Of a stretch of 64,000 nucleotides of DNA, positions 3,523-14,496 are shown in pieces; the stretch's first letter is position 1, and every line of letters starts with the position of its first letter. Under the pieces are notes generated by a model. The model was not told the DNA's origin. It did no database searches and saw only the letters and a program-made list of their open reading frames with translations. Source of the DNA: Hyaloraphidium curvatum SAG 235-1 (lineage: Eukaryota; Fungi; Monoblepharomycota); contig JAIVFI010000032.1 in NCBI GenBank assembly GCA_025558095.1, forward strand, positions 372,001-436,000, given 5' to 3'. The position numbers were made by a program, and so were the translations under genes.

Positions 3523-5031
3523 TCATCCCGGACAGACCGTCTGGAGGGTGAAGCTCACCCCTGCACCCCGGAGTAGCGTCCACATCGCGACCATCACCGT
3601 GACGAAGGTAACGGCGAACCCTCTGACGACCGAGTAGGTCACTTTGAAGCCCACAAAGGTCCCCTGTAGCCCGTCTGTCCTCCCAAAGGCATCCAGCAGC
3701 TCCGCGTGGTCCCGCAGCACGCGCTCCACTGCCGCGGGGGGCCGGTCCGCCGCCGCCACGAGGATCCGGGTGCGGTTTTTGCGGTACAGCTCTGCCACCT
3801 GGTCGATCTGCCCGTTGGCTGCGGCGATGTTAAGCATATCCTGCACCAAGAGCACGGGGATGAGGACCACGAAGGAGAGGATCCAGGCGTTGACGCAGCC
3901 CGCGCCGGCGGCGGTGACGACGCCGCACGCGAGCACAAGGGGAAGGAGTCCAATGGTCGTAGCTCGGCCGGTGGAGAGGTGCTCCAGCTCCGCGGGCCAC
4001 ACCCGCGCGAGGGAAAAGTGCAGCCGCACGTAGGGTTCCCTGGCCGCCGGGGCCGGCAGCTCGCCCGTCCGCGCGCAGGAGGCGAGCCGCGCGAGGGTGT
4101 CGCCGAGCAAGATATCCGCGGCGCGGCGGCGGAGGCGGCCCTGCAAACGGAGCAGAGCGACGCCAGGCGCGCTCCAGAGCCTGCTAAACCTTGAGTGGAG
4201 CACATACACGAACCAGTTGATCAGCCAGGACACCGTGACACACGCTATGGCCCAGGGGGTGGCCCGGAGGAGCGGGCCAAAGGTGAAGACAAGCGTCCAG
4301 ACGACGAAGATCTCGGCGGAGAGCTCGGAGACCAAAGGAGGGATGATGGCCAAGACGCGCAGGACAGCTGCCTGACCGGGCAGTGACCCGCTGCATGGGC
4401 TGCGCGGACACGTGCAAGCCGGGTCGCCGTCCCGGTGGGCGACCAGGGGCGAAGGGTCGGCCAGGAGCTGCCTCCACCGCACGAGGACTGCCATTGGGTG
4501 CCCGTTTACGAAGGGCTGCCAAAGCACGTCCCCACCGGCAAGTAACCCACGGATGCCGTAGACGATGACTCCTCCAGCCAAGAGCGCGATGGCGGCCGTG
4601 TAGACTGCGACATGAAGATGACTGAAGGTGCCCGCGACGTCGTTCAGGATCCAAGTGGGCGGAACCAGCAAGATGTGGCCCACAGCCACGGCCAAGAGGC
4701 GGATTCCCGTCCACTTGGTCAAGCCGATCGTCGCGAGGTGCAGCCGGGTGCCGGCCTGGAGGAACCTGTCGTTGTCCAGGCCGGCCACCAGCGACGCAGC
4801 GTCCAGCTGCTCGGGCGCCGGGCCCGAAGCGCCGCCGTCCTCCAAGTTGCTGTCTGAAAACTGCTGGAGAACCTCCGCCGCGCCGCCCGTGCCAGCCGTG
4901 CCGGCCGGGAAGAGCGCAAGCTCGTCGGCGGGCGAGAGGCGGAGCGGCCCGGCGGGGTCGGGATCGCGGACGGGACGGAGCGGGACCGCCGCCTCGTCGC
5001 TCTCCTTCTCCATGGGTACGTCCTTGTGCAC
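3523..5031 (-). CDS. Uncharacterised 7-TM membrane protein, family copy 1 (candidate OR/GR-like 7TM ion channel)
   Basis: Intronless 502-aa ORF with about 7 hydrophobic segments. Motifs CTCPRSPCSG, AAANGQIDQVAELY and GFKVTYSVVRGFAVTFVT..WTLLRGAGV are shared with the genes at 39631 and 58011. Confidence 0.75.
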   Translation of the reverse strand: MHKDVPMEKESDEAAVPLRPVRDPDPAGPLRLSPADELALFPAGTAGTGGAAEVLQQFSDSNLEDGGASGPAPEQLDAASLVAGLDNDRFLQAGTRLHLATIGLTKWTGIRLLAVAVGHILLVPPTWILNDVAGTFSHLHVAVYTAAIALLAGGVIVYGIRGLLAGGDVLWQPFVNGHPMAVLVRWRQLLADPSPLVAHRDGDPACTCPRSPCSGSLPGQAAVLRVLAIIPPLVSELSAEIFVVWTLVFTFGPLLRATPWAIACVTVSWLINWFVYVLHSRFSRLWSAPGVALLRLQGRLRRRAADILLGDTLARLASCARTGELPAPAAREPYVRLHFSLARVWPAELEHLSTGRATTIGLLPLVLACGVVTAAGAGCVNAWILSFVVLIPVLLVQDMLNIAAANGQIDQVAELYRKNRTRILVAAADRPPAAVERVLRDHAELLDAFGRTDGLQGTFVGFKVTYSVVRGFAVTFVTVMVAMWTLLRGAGVSFTLQTVCPG

Positions 5032-6090
5032 AGCGTGGTCCTTTTTCGGGCCCTGGCTCTTCGGCGGGAGATTGTGGAAGGACCCGTGGGTGACAGATCT
5101 TAGCTAGAGGCGCCAAGAAACCCGAGGTGCACTTCCGGGCCCCTGCTGGACGACGACTCGGCTATCGATCTCTTCGCCACGTTCGCTCACTACATCGCCT
5201 GACCCCCGCCCCGCCCGACCTCTGTTTGTTTGACAAACTCTGCGTCCAGGAGACCGTGCGGCTCAACAACTATAACGACCAGCTCGCGTCCTCGGGCCGC
5301 TATACCCACTACTACGGGGACCAACAGTGCCAAAGTGGTACTGAAGAACCATCACCCCAAGGGCAACGGCGCTCCGGCACCGTCGGCTCGTCCCACGGCG
5401 AGTGAAGCTGCCGAAACGACCTCCCCACACTGCGCGGGTAGCAGTCGAGCCCTCCGGGCAGTCCGGGGCGCGGTCCGCAGCCCCTCGTGTGCACAGTCGG
5501 GCCAGGGTGACGCTGGAGAACAGAAGAACGGAGGCGTTGTTGCATGTATGCTGACTCGGTCCGCCCGATCATGATGCCCATCCGGGAGTCGCACTCCAAG
5601 GCATGCCCATCCGCGCCAGCTGACTCGAGTCCGAAACGGCAGCGAGTCCAAGATCGTTCCGTCCGCTGGGGTCTCCGTCCGGCCCGCGTTTCTCCGGTCG
5701 CTGTTCGTCCGGTCGCCACGGGACCCGCGACAGCGAACTTGGCCGGCGCCGCGCGGCCGCCTTCCCTGCGCTCTTTAAGCGCAGGAGAGCTTCGTCCTCT
5801 GCGGGCACACCGAAACGGGGAGGCGGCCGCCGGAGGAGGACGAGGGGCGCAAACGTGGAGTGCGACTACTCATCGGAGCGGAAAGCCCGCAGCTTTACTG
5901 TAACTCGGCCGCACCACACTTCGCTTGACTCGGATGACAGCAAAAAGCACGGTTTGTACTGAACTCAGAGAAAGCACCATTTCTGCGCAACATCCGCCTT
6001 CATCCAGCAGTCAGGTTGGTCGGTCGGGGCATGCACGTCGTGCTAATGTCCCCGCACGAACTTCCTTCACCATCAGCCCAATGCGTTGCT

Positions 6091-7077
6091 TCAAAGCCTC
6101 GCCATCATGTCCCTGCCCGGGAACGGATCCCCGTCCTTGACCCCCGCGTACCCGTCCATGACCACGCCCTGGTCCTCCTGCGACGCCCTCCCGTCGTACA
6201 CCACGTCGGGCCCCATGAACCTCAGCGACACCCTCCGTGACCGCATGCCCTTGTCGACGCCCGCGCCGCCGTGCAGGATGGACAGGTGGAAGATGAGCAG
6301 GTCCCCGGGCTGCAGGTCCCAGGCCACGATGTCGTAGGCGGCACGGTTGGCCTCGATGTCCGGCAGCCGCGGCAGCTCAGAGTCCTTGTACAGAGGTTCC
6401 GTGTCGTCGTCGGGAGAGAAGGCGGAGCCGTTGAAGAGGATGCCTTTGTGGGAGCCGCGCACGAACTCAAGCGAGTGCTTGGCGGACAGGGGGTCGAGCG
6501 AGATCCAGATCGCCACTTGCTGCGAGCCGCGGGTGCGGAGGCTGGGTAAAAGCAAATTGTCAGCGCTAGGACGTTGCTCCGACGTCCGCCGGTACCCACT
6601 AAGGCGAATCCTGCGTAGAGAGCGGGGTTAGACGGATGGTCATGGCACGTGCTCCAGAAGACCCACCTGGTGCCACGGTGTCCTGCGCACGGCGCCGCCC
6701 TCCTTCTTGAAAAGCTGCTCGTACATGTAGCGCACCTCGTCGTGCTGGCCCATGCCCCACAGCGCGCGCACGATGGTGTCGATGCCGGCAGCCCGGGCGA
6801 TTGGAGCCATCTTGTTTGTCTTGTCCTCGAAGAAGACCTCGGGGCTGCCCTCCTTGCCGAAGAGGTTGTTTGCGGTGGGGCTCGGGTTGGCGAAGGCGTG
6901 CTCGCACGCGGCCTCGATCCGCGCGAGGCCGTCCTTGGTCAGCGCGCCGCGGAGGCACACCACGCCGTCGCGCTCGAGCACGCGCGCGGCCTCGGCCCAG
7001 TTCTGCGGGGGCAGCGCGGAGAGCGGCACCGGCGGCGGCAGCTGCGGCGGCGCCTCGGGCGCGAACACGGACGCCAT
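6091..7077 (-). CDS. PhyH-family Fe(II)/2-oxoglutarate dioxygenase (3 exons)
   Basis: Exons 7077-6667, 6610-6600 and 6541-6091 give 'RRTPWHQ|DSPY|LRTRGSQQVAIWISLD...LEFVRGSH...PGDLLIFHLSILHG', an HxD...H triad. Confidence 0.85.
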
Positions 7078-7329
7078 CGCTCGGAGTTCGTGGAGGGTGG
7101 CGAGCGGGGGACAGAGTCCACTGAACGTCCGCGTGGCTGATTTTCGCCACCTCGCCACCCCGACGAACCGTCCGCTCGTGACCGACTCGCGAAGGCGGCC
7201 GCGAGCGAGTCTTCGCCGATCCGCACGCCGCGAGGGATACTTGGGCAATCTCACATGATCGGCAGCGCGCGAATCTGATCCCCGTTCTTCAAAATCTCTT
7301 CCACCTTGCAAGAGTACAGATTATTCGCT

Positions 7330-10300
7330 TCACCAGCTCAGCAATTCCTCCAGCTTCGCCACGTCCGCGTTGGACCTGTCCAGGTCCGCCCCGTTCTTGA
7401 GCCGCCGGAAGAAGATGTCGCAGTCCTCGTTGGTGCAGAGCACCTCGTCCACACGCGAATGCTGGCACTGCCTGCAGATGCTGTGCAGGTACGCGGATTC
7501 CTTGGCGAGGCCGGCGAGCTCCGAACCGAGGGTGGAGTAGATGATGGAGCGCTGCAGCGGCAAGTCAGGAGAGAGCAGGTCCGCATGGCAATCGAAAGCA
7601 CTCACCGAGGGCATGCATTCTTCGCAGAGCGCCTCGCCGCCCTTGGTCAGCTTCCGGCACCAAGTGCAGTTGCTGGTCTCGGCCGACTTGGAGAAAAAGG
7701 TCGCGATCGACCCCTTCCTCGGCGTCCCTGCGCTCCGCGCGACCACCTTGGTGTGGTCGCCCTTGAAAAGACTCTGCACTTCAGTCGGCGGCAGAATGAG
7801 TTCGAAGAGGCGCGTGAGCTGGTTCTCGATCTGGTGCGTCAGGTAGTAGGGATAGTCGAGCGGAAGCTCGTTGCGGAGCGCGTAAGCCGGGTCCTCGGAC
7901 TTTTCGAAGCCCTTGGCCGTGGCGGCGCCGGCAACGTAGACAAACGAGATGCTGGACGACGCAGGGAATCAACTCCTCAGCCGTGATTCCGGAATCGAGG
8001 CAATCAACCCACCGCTCGCCGTCCTTGAACTCCCGCCACGGCTCCCTCTTCCGCATGCGCTCGACCAACTCCACGTGAGGCTGCTTCGCCTTGTAGTCCC
8101 CGCTCTCGTTGCCCAGCCAGAGCCCCTTGGTGAGCACGAACTCGCCCGCGTGGTTCCTCCCCTCGAGCATCCTCCTGATGGCCCACTTCGTGTAGTCCAC
8201 CGCCCTCGCGATGTATCCCGCGCGCTCCGCCGGCGACACCTTGCCCGCGGGACCGTTGTCCTTGTCCCGGGCCATGAGGATGTCGACGACGTTCGTCATC
8301 ATGGTGATGAGGATGGGCGAGCTGTCGCGGCGCTGCGACTCGATGCCCTTGGCCGTCACGCCGTTCGGGGCGTCCGGGTTCGTCCACTCCATGGCGCAGT
8401 ACCGCTTGCGGTTGATCAGGAGGGAGGGGAAGAAGACGCTCTGGAACTCGAGCTGGATCGGATCCGGGAAGGTCTTGGAGACCCGCGCCGCTATGTCCTT
8501 GCCCAGCCGGAAGGCGTCCTTGACAGAGGTCTCGGGCAGGCGCACGAACAGGCTGTCGGTGTCGCCGTACACGACCGCCGCGTCCACCTCGAAGCCCTCG
8601 GCGCGGATGCAGGTGCGCTCGATTTCGTCCTTGGAAGCCTGGAGCATGGTCGCACCGCGCTTGATCGTGGTCTCGGCGCTGAACAAGACAACCACGTCAA
8701 CAATGACCCTCGCAGAAGGAAGCAGATGTCGACTCACATCGGCAAGCACTGCAAGGGCGACTCCCGGCTCCCTACGGCCCCGTAGATGGCATTCGCAGAC
8801 ACCTTGAGCGCAACCTGCCTCCCGTTGAGGATCGTCTTCATGACCGGGTCCGACGTCTCGGCCATCTGCTTGCGGACTTTGCGGCGCTCCTCCAGAAAGA
8901 TCTCGAGGATCGACGGCACGATCCCCTTCTTGACCTGCGCCGTGACAAAGTACGATTCCTCGGGCGCCATCCCGGCCTCGTACTGGTCATCCTGCAGCTC
9001 GCCGCGATCGCTCGGCTTGAGCAGCGTCGAGAAGCAAAGGTTGTGCGCGATGATGATGGACGGATAGAGCGACCGGAAGTCGAGCACGGCGACCGAGTTG
9101 GTGGTGTCGAAGCCGGCCTCGGGCATCATGACCAGCGATCCCTCCTGCATCTGGGACTCGTTGCGCTGCTTCTGCGTTGGGATAGCGACGCCGACCTGCT
9201 TGCAGTACCGGAACAGCTGGCACCAGAACCTGATCATCTGTCCCCTCTGGAAGGTGTTGCTGATGTTGAGCCCCGTCACGCGGGCTAGCTCCAGGTACGT
9301 GATGTAGGTCGCGCCGCGGCGGACGAGGTTCATGGCCGCGTGGACCTCGCGCTCGCAGTAGTCCACGAGCCGCTTGCGGCCCGCCCGGCCCTCGGAGCGG
9401 AAGAGCGAGGTGAGCACGGATTCGTCCAGCGTCTCCTTGGTCACGCCCAGCACGGCCGAAACGCAGTCAGCGAGGGTGTAGCTGCGCAGCCTCTCGTCGC
9501 GCTCGATGATCTGCCTCGAGTCCAAGACTGAATGGATGGAAGTCAGCGCGCGCTGGCCCTGGCCGCCCTTTTACCCACCGATCCGACCCGTCATGCTCAG
9601 CGTCACAAACTCGCGGTTGCTCGTGCTGGCCATCCTCCTCTGTCCCCTGACCCAGTCCGAGCGGTAGATCTGCTTCTTGCCGGTCTTGGTGTCGAGATGC
9701 GGGATCCTTCCCAGGCGGTTGAACACGAGCTTGAGCTCCAACGCCCGGGCCATGAGGACCGCAAACTGCTCCGTCACGTCGAATCCGGTTACAATATCGG
9801 GGTCGTACGCCATGAGCATGCTCTGGAAGCCGGCAAGCATCGACTTTTCGTCGGGATATCGAAGAATCCGGGTGCGTCCGTCGAGGTAGGGGTGCGAGGG
9901 CTCATAGTCCGAGTAGGTGTGGCAAAAGACGAGCACGACGTCGTTCTTGCAGGATTCGGGGGTGGATTCGGTGTGGTTCCGGGTCAAGAGCACCGTGATG
10001 ACGCCGACGAAACGGTCCGGAGATTCGGGCTCCGAACCCGTGTCCGTCGCCGCTTTGCTCGGAGTCTTTGCCGGAGTTGTCGTCTTCGACGCCACGCGGG
10101 AGCCCTGTCCCTTCTTCAGAGTCGTAAACGCGCTGGCCGCAGGTTTGGCTGCTGGCTCTTCCGGGCGCTCCTGCAGGAGCTGGGTCACCGAAACGGCCGC
10201 GATCCTGTGCTCCGCCACGGAAGACCATTCCAGCTCCGAGTGGTTCCTCGCGAGAATGTCCTCAAACTGGCACGTCACTCCGACCGAACACCGCGTCCAC

Positions 10301-11337
10301 ATGAAGTTGGTCCGCTGGTTCTTGGTCTCCAGCACGCGGTAGCGCCCCGCCCGCAGGGTGCACCACCCTCCTCCGACGAGTCCCGACTCGACCATGAAGC
10401 GAAGGTCGTGCGAGATGTTTGCCTCGTAGACCTGGGTGTCGTAGAGCTTGCCGGCGGCAAACATCTCGGCCAGGCCGGGGACGTTGTCGGCGGATTCCAG
10501 GAGCTTGGTAGTCCTGTTTATCATGTAGGGATTGGAGAGCCGGATCTGGATGAAGTGGCGGTAGGTGTCGCCCGCATTCGGCCGGTAGTACCTGTTGAAG
10601 AGTTTTAGCTTGCCGCAGACGTCCAGGAGCCAGAGAACTCACATCAAGGGATCGCGCTCAATCTTCGTGACTGAGTGGACAGTAATCTTGTTGTCCGCCT
10701 TCTCGACGGCTTTCCGGAAGGCACCCCCGTCTAGGCTGGGTGTGAGTTTCGTTCGAGAAGCCGAGCAACAAGACCAACCCTTGTCGACGTCGAACTTCCT
10801 CGTGACGGGGAACAGGAGGAAAGGGTAAAACCCAGACACGTACGCGGTCACCGAGTACCCGTCGGCAGTGATGCCAAACAGCCGAACCAGGGGCGAGCCG
10901 TCCGTGTTTGGGTTTGCGTTCCCCGCGCGGTCGCGAGATGCGTCCTCGACCTCCAGGACCTGGAAGGAGAGGTCGCCTGTTGGTTTCCAGCCCGTGGGCC
11001 GCACGACGTCCGCCCAGATGTCCGGTGTCGCCCAGCCGGCGGCGGGAGGCTGCCCCGGTCGCGCATCGGGTTCCTCGACCAGGTCGAGGTCCATGGCCTC
11101 CCCATCGTCCGCCTGACCCTCGGACTCCGACACATTGTCCTCGTCCAGCGCAAACACAGGCAGCTCATCCGCTGGCTCATCGTAGGAAGCGGCCTCGTCG
11201 TCTTCATCGCGGGGTCGCTTCCGCGACGGCTGTCCCCCGGACGTTGGTCCGGACCGAGGCTCGGGTTTGGCGCGGCCAGCGGCGTCCGACCCAGGCTTCG
11301 AGTATCTGAAGCGGTCGAACGGGTTGCTCGACGCCAT
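7330..11337 (-). CDS. DNA polymerase delta-like family B polymerase with degenerate proofreading exonuclease (multi-exon)
   Basis: Polymerase motifs VLDFRSLYPSIIIAHNLCFSTL, RQVALKVSANAIYG, VVYGDTDSLFV and LINRKRY. Pol-delta-type segments LRSYTL and KQPHVELVERMRKR. C-terminal CysA (CTWC..CEEC) and CysB (CRQC..CTNEDC). Confidence 0.88.
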
Positions 11338-12493: not shown

Positions 12494-14257
12494 TCAGGCA
12501 ACGTCAGTGCCGGCATCTGAAGAGCTGTCCGACAAGTCCGAGTCGGCCTTGATCTCGGCGTCCGCCTTCTTCTTGGCCCTCTTCACCGCGGCCTTGTCCG
12601 TACCAGCACACTCCTCCGCCGTCTTCGCCTCCGCCGCCTTCTTGGCCTCCTCCACCTTGTTCGCCAGCCTCGCCTCCTCCTCGGCCTGCTCCTTCAGCCA
12701 GTTGTCCAACCCGTCCAGCACACCACGGGGACCATCAACGCGGAACGCCATGAACAGCCCCTGAAGCGCGGCCGTGGTCTGCGTGCCCTCGCCGATCCGC
12801 TCCGCGATCTCGTCCGCCAGCGCCTCGACATCCTGGCCGGGGTACGCGCCGACGGGGAAGAACTTGAGCGCCATCCTGCGGACCTGGCTGCGGTCGGCCT
12901 TGCCGAAGAAGATGCGCTTGTCGACACGGCCGGGGCGGAGGAGGGCTGGGGGGAGGCGCTCGGGGTGGTTCGTGGTGAGGAAGACGAGCGAACCCTCCTG
13001 CGCCGCGATGCCGTCCAGGGCGTTGAGAAGGCCGGAGAGGGTGACCGAGCTGCCGTTGCCGGCGCGCATGTTGTTGCCTCCTTCGACGGGGCCGGTGGGC
13101 TTCGAAGTGTCCTCGGGAGGGAAGGCTGCGTCGACATCCTCGAGGAGGAGAATCGAGTCCGGAGGAGCCGCGATCATGAGCTCATTCAGGGTCTGGTCGC
13201 TCATGACGGGCGAGGAGAGCGAGACAACGCAGACCGAGAGGCCGAGGTGGCCAGCAAGCGCCACGATAATCGAGCTCTTGCCGCAACCAGGGGGGCCAAA
13301 AAGAAGGTAACCGCGCCTGTAAGGGACACCGCAGCCGGCGTACCAGTCCCGAGAGGTTTGGAAGGTGCGGATGTCGTTGACCAGGTCCTCCTTCACGCCG
13401 TCCTTCAGGATGACCGACTCGAAGCTGCGGGGCTTCCTGGTCGCGGTCCGCCTCCAGCGGTCGTAGGTCGGCGAGAACACCATGGTCTTGTCAGACGCTT
13501 CGGCGTAGCCCAGGTCGACCGCCTCCTTGATCATGTCGCGCAGCAGCTTCGTGTCCCCGCGAGGCGCCCAGGTGGAGAAAGTGATCACGGACTCGGGCCT
13601 CTTGCGCGAGGATCCACGCCCCGCGTCCTCGGAAGCCGCCGATGCCTGCGATCCGCACGAGACCCGGACGCGCCGGCCGTGAACCCAAAGATCATAGTCT
13701 CCCTGGTCGGGAACGAAGACCAGCTTGGGCCGCCGGGCCTCGGGGTCCATCCGCTGATCGTAGTACGGATCCGTCTGGTACTTGTCGACGAAGAACGACT
13801 TGGCCACGAGCCGGCGGACCTTGCCCGCGGTGTGTACGGCCAGCTGGTCCGCCTCGATGCGCTCGCCCGTGATCTCCCCCGACAGGCGCTGGTACAGATA
13901 CTCCGAGACATGGCTGTACACCTCCTCCTTCTCCGTGATGGTCAGCGAGACGTAGCACATGTCCAGGAGGTGGCGGTACAGGCTCAGCGCGCGCTGGCGA
14001 AGAGAGTCCAGCAGGAAACCCATGACCATGAGCGCGAGGCCGCCCGAGAAGATCTGGTTCGAGAGGAAGAGCGACGCCGCGGGGCCGAAGAAGTACGTGG
14101 CCAGGAAGGTGACTAGCGTGCCCTGCAAGCCGGGGAGGGAGAAGGCGCCGTCGGCGGACGCGTTCGCAGCCTGCGGCCCGGCGAATGCCTGCGCATGCCC
14201 GGCGAAGGTGCCGGGGCCCGCGAGGAGGAGCTCGGCGATGATGTTGGCGCTCGCCAT
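12494..14257 (-). CDS. BCS1: BCS1-like mitochondrial AAA+ ATPase
   Basis: N-terminal TM (NQIFSGGLALMVMG), GVPYRRGYLLFGPPGCGKSS (Walker A), ILLLEDVD (Walker B), VTLSGLLNALDG and TTNHPERLPPALLRPGRVD. Intronless. Confidence 0.88.
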   Translation of the reverse strand: MASANIIAELLLAGPGTFAGHAQAFAGPQAANASADGAFSLPGLQGTLVTFLATYFFGPAASLFLSNQIFSGGLALMVMGFLLDSLRQRALSLYRHLLDMCYVSLTITEKEEVYSHVSEYLYQRLSGEITGERIEADQLAVHTAGKVRRLVAKSFFVDKYQTDPYYDQRMDPEARRPKLVFVPDQGDYDLWVHGRRVRVSCGSQASAASEDAGRGSSRKRPESVITFSTWAPRGDTKLLRDMIKEAVDLGYAEASDKTMVFSPTYDRWRRTATRKPRSFESVILKDGVKEDLVNDIRTFQTSRDWYAGCGVPYRRGYLLFGPPGCGKSSIIVALAGHLGLSVCVVSLSSPVMSDQTLNELMIAAPPDSILLLEDVDAAFPPEDTSKPTGPVEGGNNMRAGNGSSVTLSGLLNALDGIAAQEGSLVFLTTNHPERLPPALLRPGRVDKRIFFGKADRSQVRRMALKFFPVGAYPGQDVEALADEIAERIGEGTQTTAALQGLFMAFRVDGPRGVLDGLDNWLKEQAEEEARLANKVEEAKKAAEAKTAEECAGTDKAAVKRAKKKADAEIKADSDLSDSSSDAGTDVA

Positions 14258-14496
14258 GGATTCAATCGGCGGAAAGGACGTGGAAGAACTGGACCACGAC
14301 CGTCTGGCAACGCGCGTTTTTGAATACTTGGTGGAGAAGCTCGAGGCTGCGCACCTGAGTGTCGGGGCGAACTGGCCGTGGGGGATTTCCCGCCCACAGC
14401 CACGTTGCGATTCGCGCCTGCTGAATCCACTCCACCCCGCGCAAAAGTGGAGAAGCAACGAGATGAATGATCACGACTACATCAGAGTTCTTCAAT

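What the first reader, a model, noticed from the sequence alone, without database searches (positions are those of the whole stretch)
7330..11337. Pol delta-like polymerase with all three proofreading motifs degenerate: candidate extra, error-prone B-family polymerase
Seen: the polymerase active site (DFRSLYPS, YGDTDS) and the CysA/CysB metal-binding tail are intact. Where Pol delta has ExoI 'LRILSFDIEC' this gene reads 'HRIAAVSVTQ' (~10180-10210), followed by a ~40-aa Lys/Ala/Thr insertion. ExoII 'GYNxxxFD' reads 'GFDVTEQFA', and ExoIII 'YCLKD' reads 'YCERE'. Known: replicative Pol delta conserves these carboxylates, and the exo-dead eukaryotic B polymerases are alpha and zeta/Rev3. The scaffold here is delta-like (YEANI..LRFMV, LRSYTL, KQPHVELVERMRKR) and lacks the large Rev3 insertion, although VVYGDTDSLFV is Rev3-like. 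Inference: a second, non-proofreading delta paralog specialised for repair, translesion or mutagenic synthesis.
Basis: partly seen in the sequence, partly recalled or inferred. Interest (0 to 1): 0.85.

Follow-up and report, generated by a model that had tools for sequence, protein, structure and literature searches.

The report
Fifth, proofreading-dead delta-like DNA polymerase
Besides the usual four B-family DNA polymerases, this fungal genome has an expressed fifth one, related to polymerases delta and zeta, that has lost its proofreading site; the same extra enzyme is kept in several early-branching fungi, so it may be an overlooked repair or damage-bypass polymerase.

Summary
The minus-strand gene at 11337-7330 encodes a 1227-aa B-family polymerase. 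Polymerase motifs A, B and C and the CysA/CysB tail are intact. The ExoI and ExoII carboxylates are gone and ExoIII reads Glu instead of Asp.

The same 32-Mb genome also holds a canonical Pol delta with intact exo motifs, a REV3 with its large insert, Pol alpha and Pol epsilon. This gene is therefore a fifth B-family polymerase.

It belongs to a conserved family, here called D2, found in chytrids, Blastocladiomycota, Mucoromycota and Taphrinomycotina. All members lack the ExoI Asp. They share a new conserved motif in the exonuclease beta-hairpin region and a disordered insert after ExoI.

Trees place D2 (100% support) outside both crown Pol delta and crown Rev3, next to a small group that includes a Chlorokybus protein. 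AU tests reject nesting among opisthokont deltas (p=2e-7) or inside Rev3 (p=2e-52). They cannot decide between sister-of-delta and sister-of-zeta.

Only three B-subunit genes exist, so D2 probably shares the Pol31-type subunit. The function (translesion or repair synthesis) is inferred, not shown. I found no prior description.

The parts
7330..11337 (-). Whole CDS of the D2 polymerase: 7 exons, 1227 aa plus stop
   Evidence: The spliced model translates without internal stops. The exon joints come from a transcript contig.
10779..11337 (-). Exon 1: acidic/basic N-terminal extension with an NLS-like SRKRPRDEDDE (11226-11194) and the start of the N-terminal domain
10731..10778 (-). Intron 1, 48 nt, GT..AG, in-frame (the ORF stays open through it)
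   Evidence: The transcript contig skips it; sequence.
10643..10730 (-). Exon 2
10592..10642 (-). Intron 2, 51 nt, GTGAGT..CAG
9579..10591 (-). Exon 3: rest of the N-terminal domain plus the degenerate exonuclease domain
   Evidence: Pfam DNA_pol_B_exo1, 6e-15. AF2 model with mean pLDDT 74; its best Foldseek match is Pol delta 3IAY, E=1e-13.
10180..10209 (-). ExoI position without the Asp/Glu pair (HRIAAVSVTQ)
   Evidence: Alignment with 28 canonical deltas; coordinates.
10012..10179 (-). Low-complexity K/A/T/S/P insert of about 55 aa, predicted disordered. It sits at the site where Rev3 carries its large insert.
   Evidence: pLDDT below 50 for exon residues 149-185. Inserts of 16-133 aa lie at the same site in D2 members.
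9760..9786 (-). ExoII position (GFDVTEQFA): Asp replaced, plus a one-residue deletion shared by most D2 rows and the Chlorokybus group
9607..9672 (-). Family signature in the exonuclease beta-hairpin region (QIY..WVR.QRRMA.TSNREF), with a roughly 5-aa insertion relative to delta and zeta
   Evidence: The model shows strand, short helix, strand at exon residues 302-332.
9528..9578 (-). Intron 3, 51 nt, GTGGGT..CAG
8738..9527 (-). Exon 4: ExoIII position (YCERE, 9360-9346), motif A (9084-9058), fingers with motif B (8805-8779)
   Evidence: Pfam DNA_pol_B, 2.6e-49. PDB phmmer: Pol delta 178 bits against Rev3 70 bits. Motifs.
8679..8737 (-). Intron 4, 59 nt, GTGAGT..CAG
8013..8678 (-). Exon 5: palm motif C YGDTDS (8575-8543), KKRY-like NRKRY (8413-8393), thumb
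   Evidence: Pfam DNA_pol_B, 2.9e-40
7952..8012 (-). Intron 5, 61 nt, GTGGGT..CAG
7606..7951 (-). Exon 6: end of the thumb, PIP-like KGSIATFF (7716-7693), CysA C-x2-C-x10-C-x2-C (7668-7615)
   Evidence: Pfam zf-C4pol
7552..7605 (-). Intron 6, 54 nt, GTGAGT..CAG, in-frame, between CysA and CysB
7330..7551 (-). Exon 7: CysB C-x2-C-x9-C-x4-C (7476-7420) and the stop codon

Best explanation
The gene encodes the catalytic subunit of a fifth nuclear B-family DNA polymerase. It belongs to a distinct, conserved lineage of the delta/zeta class, here called D2.

Shown:
- The gene is intact, transcribed and spliced.
- It coexists with a canonical Pol delta, REV3, Pol alpha and Pol epsilon.
- It has orthologues in chytrids, Blastocladiomycota, Mucoromycota and Taphrinomycotina.
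- Every member lacks the ExoI Asp. All but one lack a carboxylate at the ExoII Asp column, and that one has Glu there. All keep polymerase motifs A, B and C and the KKRY-type motif.

Inferred mechanism:
- The enzyme polymerises DNA but cannot proofread.
- The exonuclease fold is kept as a structural or DNA-contacting module. It carries a new, strongly conserved beta-hairpin motif and a disordered basic, Ser/Thr-rich loop at the dead ExoI site, the site where Rev3 has its regulatory insert.
- Through its CysA/CysB C-terminal domain it binds the Pol31/POLD2-type B-subunit. It must share that subunit with delta and zeta, because the genome has only three B-subunit genes.
- Through a PIP-like motif just before CysA it uses PCNA.
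- Its likely role is low-fidelity or specialised synthesis: extension past lesions, gap filling, or recombination-associated or stage-specific synthesis. It would act as an alternative catalytic subunit on the delta accessory platform.
For: - Gene model and expression: a 3783-nt contig from a public run matches 100% and skips six GT..AG introns. The result is an open 3684-nt CDS.
- Five polymerase loci in the genome: Pfam DNA_pol_B hits at C11, C19, C14, C23 and C32. zf-C4pol hits at C19, C14 and C32. DUF1744 at C23. ORF content identifies alpha, delta and zeta.
- Similarity is closest to delta. PDB phmmer gives 178 bits to Pol3 against 70 to Rev3. The fold of the exo region matches 3IAY best, at 1e-13. 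Per-domain identity to the genome's own delta exceeds identity to its own Rev3 in every domain.
- Family: an exhaustive HMMER search with the exo exon gives 28 representatives at E<=1e-10, at 66-371 bits, while the remaining hits, which include canonical deltas, start at about 55 bits and mostly score about 35-50.
- Exo motifs are degenerate throughout the family while motifs A, B and C are conserved.
- Phylogeny: D2 100/100; D2 plus the Chlorokybus group 96-98; placed outside crown delta and crown Rev3.
- Only three PF04042 B-subunit loci exist.
- The PIP-like motif and CysA/CysB are conserved.
- The exo/palm identity ratio is 0.70 in D2, 0.85-0.90 in delta and 0.64 in Rev3.
Against: - No biochemical or genetic data exist. 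Polymerase activity, lack of exonuclease, partner binding and fidelity are all inferred from sequence.
- The position relative to delta and zeta depends on the model. LG+F+G4 puts D2 with delta (86/89). LG+C20-PMSF (quick search only) puts it with Rev3 (SH-aLRT 85).
- Long-branch effects could pull a fast-evolving fungal delta duplicate out of crown delta.
- Expression rests on a single run whose library type is not on record. The spliced contig itself is the evidence that it is RNA.
- The Spizellomyces orthologue lacks three of the four CysB cysteines, so B-subunit binding may not be universal.
- No binding prediction was run.
Confidence: 0.8

Rival explanations
1. D2 is a sister lineage of Pol zeta, in effect a compact second zeta. 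One ancestral exo-dead polymerase split into Rev3, which gained the Rev7-binding insert and evolved fast, and D2, which kept a delta-like sequence. D2 would then work as a lesion-extender like Rev3.
For: - The LG+C20-PMSF tree puts D2 plus the Chlorokybus group beside Rev3 (SH-aLRT 85), and AU does not reject this (p=0.20).
- Motif A (VLDF[RQ]SLYPSI) and motif C (VVYGDTDS.F) match Rev3 rather than delta.
- The insert lies at the same ExoI-loop site as Rev3's large insert.
- Both are exo-dead.
Against: - The LG+F+G4 ML tree puts D2 with delta (86/89).
- Motif B and every domain are closer to delta.
- PDB sequence and fold searches rank delta far above Rev3.
- There is no REV3_N Pfam domain.
- The genome already has a complete REV3.
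Confidence: 0.3
2. D2 is a duplicate of Pol delta that arose in the fungal stem. It lost proofreading and evolved fast, and its deep position and its link to the algal sequences are long-branch artefacts plus convergence.
For: - Named D2 members are all fungi.
- Overall similarity is highest to delta.
- Other exo-degenerate delta-like proteins exist in unrelated protists, so loss is recurrent (P0062 Polykrikos and P0073).
- Many rows fail the composition test.
Against: - AU rejects D2 nested among opisthokont deltas (p=2e-7, delta lnL 160), though only under a site-homogeneous model.
- D2 and the Chlorokybus group share an indel in ExoII, a roughly 5-aa insertion with a common motif in the beta-hairpin, and S.LQC after motif B. 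These are hard to explain by convergence.
Confidence: 0.12
3. D2 is a catalytically silent scaffold (a pseudo-polymerase), or a decaying gene.
For: The exo site is dead. The sister algal group has YxQTDS instead of YGDTDS. The Spizellomyces CTD has lost cysteines.
Against: - In all ten D2 rows the motif A and motif C Asp residues, the motif B Lys and Tyr, and the KKRY-type motif are conserved.
- Mean palm/fingers identity across fungal phyla is 54%.
- The ORF is intact, and the transcript is spliced with a word depth of about 200.
- A relative keeps an orthologue with 76% identity.
Confidence: 0.04

Closest known systems
DNA polymerase delta catalytic subunit (POLD1 / Pol3 / Cdc6)
   Same: [quoted passage not shown] Delta is the best sequence match (3IAY, 178 bits for one exon) and the best fold match. 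Motif B is delta-like, and a PIP-like motif sits at the same place before CysA.
   Different: The ExoI and ExoII carboxylates are missing, and the ExoIII Asp is Glu here. D2 has a disordered insert after ExoI and a new conserved hairpin motif. It lies outside the crown delta clade and coexists with a canonical delta in the same genome.
DNA polymerase zeta catalytic subunit (Rev3 / REV3L)
   Same: Both are exonuclease-dead delta/zeta-class enzymes with a CysA/CysB tail. Motifs A and C are Rev3-like. The insert is at the same site. Both would be an alternative catalytic subunit sharing the delta B-subunit (for D2 this is inferred).
   Different: D2 has no REV3_N domain and no long insert, so Rev7-binding motifs are not evident. 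It is not inside the Rev3 clade (AU p=2e-52 for a position beside the genome's own Rev3). Sequence similarity is much lower (70 bits). The genome has its own REV3.
DNA polymerase alpha catalytic subunit
   Same: A B-family enzyme with a naturally inactivated exonuclease domain and a two-metal-site C-terminal domain.
   Different: Alpha is the outgroup in all trees. It has different N- and C-terminal Pfam domains (PF12254, PF08996). The genome's alpha is at C11.
Exonuclease-degenerate delta-like proteins of Chlorokybus atmophyticus and two unnamed eukaryotes (P0056, P0030, P0134)
   Same: Sister group of D2 (96-98% support). They share the ExoII one-residue deletion, the hairpin insertion with its motif, and S.LQC after motif B.
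   Different: Motif C reads YxQTDS, so the first Asp is lost. The post-ExoI insert is short or absent. They are not fungal.

Membership tests
Pol delta catalytic subunit (POLD1/Pol3) | B-family polymerase core with motifs A (DxxSLYPS), B (KxxxNSxYG) and C (YGDTDS) | tested here: met
   LDFRSLYPS, KVSANAIYG and YGDTDS are present and aligned.
Pol delta catalytic subunit (POLD1/Pol3) | Active 3'-5' exonuclease: ExoI DxE, ExoII NxxxFD, ExoIII YxxxD carboxylates | tested here: not met
   The ExoI Asp and Glu and the ExoII Asp are replaced, and the ExoIII Asp is Glu. The genome's own C19 delta keeps all of them.
Pol delta catalytic subunit (POLD1/Pol3) | C-terminal domain with CysA and CysB four-cysteine motifs | tested here: met
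   Pfam zf-C4pol, 2.4e-10. Both four-Cys motifs align with those of delta.
Pol delta catalytic subunit (POLD1/Pol3) | Falls inside the clade of canonical eukaryotic deltas, orthologous to the replicative enzyme | tested here: not met
   D2 lies outside the 27-28-row delta clade in both trees. Nesting among opisthokont deltas is rejected (AU p=2e-7).
Pol zeta catalytic subunit (Rev3) | Inactivated exonuclease domain | tested here: met
Pol zeta catalytic subunit (Rev3) | REV3-specific N-terminal domain (Pfam REV3_N, PF24065) | tested here: not met
   Exon 1 has no Pfam hit. The orthologue P0147 has only PF00136, PF03104 and PF14260, while an animal Rev3 shows REV3_N and POL3_N.
Pol zeta catalytic subunit (Rev3) | Long insert between the N-terminal and exonuclease regions carrying Rev7-binding motifs | tested here: inconclusive
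   A short disordered insert (16-133 aa in the family) lies at the homologous site. No Rev7-binding motif search or binding test was done.
Pol zeta catalytic subunit (Rev3) | Falls inside the Rev3 clade | tested here: not met
   Rev3 is monophyletic without D2 (100/100). D2 beside the genome's own Rev3 is rejected (AU p=2e-52). Sister to all Rev3 is not rejected (p=0.20).
D2 family (proposed here) | Delta/zeta-class architecture with the ExoI Asp lost, the ExoII Asp replaced (usually with a one-residue deletion), and the hairpin signature Y.[AS]WV[RK].Q..A.TSN[RQ]E | tested here: met
   The ExoI and ExoII changes are present in the window protein and nine orthologues. The hairpin signature is present in the window protein and, with small departures in a few members, in the orthologues.
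D2 family (proposed here) | Coexists with canonical Pol delta and Rev3 in one genome | tested here: met
   Shown for this genome only. Not tested for the other species.
D2 family (proposed here) | Binds the Pol31-type B-subunit and PCNA; polymerase-active, exonuclease-inactive | not testable with these tools
   Inferred from CysA/CysB, the PIP-like motif, three B-subunit loci and conserved catalytic motifs.

The most novel reading that the evidence does not exclude
D2 plus the Chlorokybus-type proteins form a previously unrecognised third lineage of the delta/zeta class. It would date back to before the split of fungi and green plants, close to the last eukaryotic common ancestor, and would have been lost many times. 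The textbook set of four eukaryotic B-family polymerases would then be incomplete, and early eukaryotes would have had two different exonuclease-dead partners for the delta accessory subunits.
Probability: 0.35. Interest if true: 0.88.

Novelty: new variant of a known kind. Interest (0 to 1): 0.78.

Why it matters
Eukaryotes are taught to have four B-family polymerases: alpha, delta, epsilon and zeta. Here a fifth is expressed and has been conserved across at least four fungal phyla or subphyla. It has a dead proofreading site, an intact polymerase site and the tail that docks onto the delta accessory subunits.

If it competes with delta and zeta for Pol31/Pol32 and PCNA, it adds a new player to polymerase switching, damage tolerance and mutagenesis. 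It also gives a natural experiment on what an exonuclease-minus delta-like enzyme is used for.

Its patchy retention raises a testable evolutionary question: what made it dispensable? It is present in zoosporic fungi, Bifiguratus, Saitoella and Savitreella, and no named member came from the model yeasts, Pezizomycotina or Basidiomycota.

It also matters for annotation, because databases currently label these proteins 'DNA polymerase delta catalytic subunit'.

Tried and rejected
- The joined spliced protein was never sent to any search tool. Searches were done exon by exon by reference. The joined model was used only inside scripts, for alignment and trees.
- The search for homologous proteins with P0002 and with an 11-sequence D2 alignment returned few hits and no new members. 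Only the 8000 candidates sharing most words were scored, so a blank there means little.
- The 'careful' LG+C20-PMSF tree and treekit's AU test did not finish on one CPU. I used the quick C20 tree instead, plus a full LG+F+G4 search. Direct IQ-TREE AU tests used trees from fast searches.
- dN/dS against the closest relative (L032, 76% aa identity, GC 54% against about 64%) was not attempted, because synonymous sites would be saturated.
- Complex prediction was not run. No full-length B-subunit was available by reference: the genome's Pol31-like gene is split by introns and the tool's references do not cover eukaryotes.
- Viral origin was rejected: the gene has spliceosomal introns, a CysA/CysB tail and host-like GC.
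- Pseudogene was rejected.
- Five literature searches and three papers checked by term search gave no description of such a polymerase. The library lacks most subscription journals, so prior description cannot be excluded.
Full report
**Observation.** The minus strand between 11337 and 7330 holds a chain of open frames with Pfam matches to DNA_pol_B_exo1, DNA_pol_B (two pieces) and zf-C4pol.

One public run holds a 3783-nt contig that matches the window with no differences. It skips six segments bounded by CT..AC on the plus strand, that is GT..AG on the gene's strand. Four of these are the introns implied by the frame changes: 10642-10592, 9578-9528, 8737-8679 and 8012-7952. Two more are in-frame and invisible in an ORF scan: 10778-10731 (48 nt) and 7605-7552 (54 nt, between CysA and CysB). 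Joining the seven exons gives an open 3684-nt CDS and a 1227-aa protein. The library type of the run is not on record, but a contig that lacks six canonical introns can only come from RNA or cDNA. The gene is therefore intact, transcribed and spliced.

As required, the joined protein was not sent to any search tool. Searches used single exons by reference. The joined model was used only inside scripts.

**Is it an extra polymerase?** The window's genome has 31.9 Mb in 55 contigs. It contains B-family polymerase domains at five loci.
- C11 is Pol alpha.
- C19 is a canonical Pol delta with many short introns. It has an intact ExoI (SFDIE), ExoII (GYNVNNFD) and ExoIII (YCLKDA), and a CysA/CysB tail.
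- C14 is REV3. It has a 981-aa exon holding the N-terminal domain and a long insert, a Rev3-type ExoII region, and zf-C4pol.
- C23 is Pol epsilon, with DUF1744 at 4.7e-127.
- C32 is the gene under study.

The gene is thus neither the organism's only delta nor its Rev3.

**What it resembles.** Against solved structures, the palm/fingers exon scores 178 bits to yeast Pol3 and 171 to human POLD1. It scores only 70 bits to yeast Rev3. The exonuclease exon finds only Pol delta, and weakly, at about 42 bits.

I made an AlphaFold2 model of that exon from a 21-row alignment. Its mean pLDDT is 74, and the post-ExoI insert is below 50. The model matches Pol delta best (3IAY, E=1e-13). HSV polymerase and Pol alpha follow, and Pol zeta is not among the rows listed, which reach rank 50. 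In every domain the protein is closer to the genome's own delta than to its own Rev3.

**A conserved family.** An exhaustive HMMER search of 1.84 billion representatives with the exonuclease exon gave 28 proteins at E<=1e-10, scoring 66-371 bits. The remaining hits, which include canonical deltas, start at about 55 bits and mostly score about 35-50. Named members come from these species:
- Rhizophlyctis rosea and Spizellomyces (Chytridiomycota)
- Gonapodya prolifera (Monoblepharidomycetes)
- Paraphysoderma sedebokerense (Blastocladiomycota)
- Bifiguratus adelaidae (Mucoromycota)
- Saitoella complicata and Savitreella phatthalungensis (Taphrinomycotina)

An unnamed relative (L032) carries an intact orthologue, 76% identical over residues 266-1014.

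In all ten full-length members, which I call D2, the findings are:
- The ExoI Asp is absent in all, and the ExoI Glu is absent in nine.
- The ExoII Asp column holds no carboxylate except a Glu in Gonapodya, and most members have a one-residue deletion there.
- ExoIII keeps Y...D in five members and has Glu in the other five, including this one.
- Motif A (VLDF[RKA]SLYPS), motif B (K..[AS]NA.YG), motif C (YGDTDS) and the KKRY-type motif are all conserved.
- Mean pairwise identity is 54% in palm/fingers and 38% in the exonuclease domain. That ratio is 0.70, against 0.85-0.90 in delta and 0.64 in Rev3. This is the pattern expected for a working polymerase with a non-catalytic exonuclease fold.

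The exonuclease domain is not simply decaying. The segment that aligns with delta's FSSKAYGTRE carries a roughly 5-residue insertion and a strongly conserved signature, Q.Y.[AS]WV[RK].Q(RRM)A.TSN[RQ]EF. From my own knowledge of the Pol3 structure, that delta segment is the exonuclease beta-hairpin. In the model it is strand, short helix, strand.

Immediately after the dead ExoI strand, nine of the ten members have a Ser/Thr/Lys/Pro-rich insert; the segment measured there is 52-133 residues against 29 in canonical delta, and 74 in this gene. The alignment places Rev3's large insert at the same site.

Just before CysA there is a PIP-like motif, KGSIATFF here and hydrophobic-x-x-F-[FL] in most of the family. 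It sits at the position of delta's G.L..F motif. An earlier first-reader note (s1-706040) had flagged it. CysA and CysB are kept in most members. Spizellomyces lacks three of the four CysB cysteines, and in Rhizophlyctis the first CysA pair does not align.

**Phylogeny.** The data set had 55 rows and 928 trimmed columns, with alpha as outgroup. The genome's own delta, Rev3 and alpha were entered as tblastn-projected pseudo-proteins.
- LG+C20-PMSF, quick search, SH-aLRT: D2 100; D2 plus three exo-degenerate proteins (P0056 from Chlorokybus atmophyticus, and P0030 and P0134, both unnamed) 96; Rev3 100; that 13-row clade beside Rev3 85.
- LG+F+G4, full search, SH-aLRT/UFBoot: D2 100/100; D2 plus the Chlorokybus group 95.5/98; canonical delta 74/87; Rev3 100/100; (D2 plus Chlorokybus group) with delta 86/89.
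- AU tests, LG+F+G4: D2 nested among opisthokont deltas is rejected (p=2e-7). D2 beside the genome's own Rev3 is rejected (p=2e-52). D2 with delta (p=0.30) and D2 with Rev3 (p=0.20) are both acceptable.

The robust statement is that D2 is a separate lineage of the delta/zeta class. It is neither crown delta nor crown Rev3. Which of the two it is sister to is open.

The link to the Chlorokybus group is backed by shared derived characters: the ExoII deletion, the hairpin insertion and motif, and S.LQC after motif B. That points to an origin before fungi and green plants diverged, or to a transfer between them. Long-branch attraction and compositional bias (flags 15 rows) remain caveats.

**Mechanism (inferred).**
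- Catalytic Asp residues and primer/template-binding motifs are intact, so the enzyme should polymerise DNA.
- Without the ExoI and ExoII metal ligands it cannot proofread.
- The genome has only three B-subunit genes (PF04042 at C27, C14 and C21), presumably for alpha, delta/zeta and epsilon. The D2 tail with CysA and CysB would therefore dock on the same Pol31-type subunit that delta and Rev3 use. The PIP-like motif suggests PCNA use, and an N-terminal SRKRPRDEDDE stretch suggests nuclear import.
- I therefore read D2 as a third alternative catalytic subunit on the delta accessory platform, suited to synthesis where proofreading is a hindrance: extension from mismatched or damaged termini, gap filling, or recombination-associated or stage-specific synthesis. 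None of this is shown.

**Known or new.** Databases name these proteins 'DNA polymerase delta catalytic subunit' or 'hypothetical protein'. The 2020 survey of B-family polymerases lists four eukaryotic enzymes (PMC7544198). Five full-text searches and two further papers checked by term search gave no description of a fifth, exonuclease-dead delta/zeta-class lineage. The library omits most subscription journals, so this is absence of evidence only.

An earlier follow-up note of this scan (s1-705373) names the genome as Hyaloraphidium curvatum, a monoblepharid. I did not verify that. It fits the weak grouping of the window protein with Gonapodya (support 65).

**Verdict.** The functional role and the exact deep placement remain open.

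Noticed in passing
proteins P0056 (Chlorokybus atmophyticus), P0030, P0134; L031:1001-4681: The sister group of D2 is also exonuclease-degenerate, but it has YxQTDS in place of YGDTDS in motif C, so the first Asp is lost. P0134 is encoded by an intronless gene between an FAD synthetase gene and a Rieske protein gene on a compact contig. It may be a polymerase-impaired relative in green algae.
   Followed up: partly
proteins P0062 (Polykrikos kofoidii transcript) and P0073 (unnamed): Two further delta-like proteins have degenerate ExoI/II/III but delta-type motifs A and C. They sit at or near the base of the canonical delta clade. Loss of proofreading in delta-like paralogues may be recurrent in protists.
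   Followed up: no
window 10731-10778 and 7552-7605 (minus strand): Two introns of 48 and 54 nt are multiples of three and contain no stop codon, so ORF scans read straight through them. They would add 34 spurious residues to the protein, 18 of them between CysA and CysB.
   Followed up: yes
protein P0147 (Spizellomyces sp. 'palustris'), C-terminal 60 residues: The D2 orthologue lacks three of the four CysB cysteines (the first, second and fourth) while CysA is intact. This is either a gene-model or sequence error, or a member that no longer binds an Fe-S cluster.
   Followed up: no
L032 (Logan contig, 13 kb), gene about 3563-7817: The closest relative's D2 orthologue is 76% identical in protein, but its contig has 54% GC against about 64% around the window gene. 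That is a large compositional shift between related genomes.
   Followed up: no
window 6091-7311 (minus strand) and 12494-14458 (minus strand): The flanking genes are a PhyH-type dioxygenase split over at least two exons and a BCS1-like mitochondrial AAA ATPase (Pfam BCS1_N, AAA, AAA_lid_BCS1). There is no functional link to the polymerase.
   Followed up: partly
G000:C14:about 431300-438000 (L023, minus strand): The genome's REV3 has a single 981-aa open exon. It contains the N-terminal domain and a long acidic, Pro-rich insert.
   Followed up: partly
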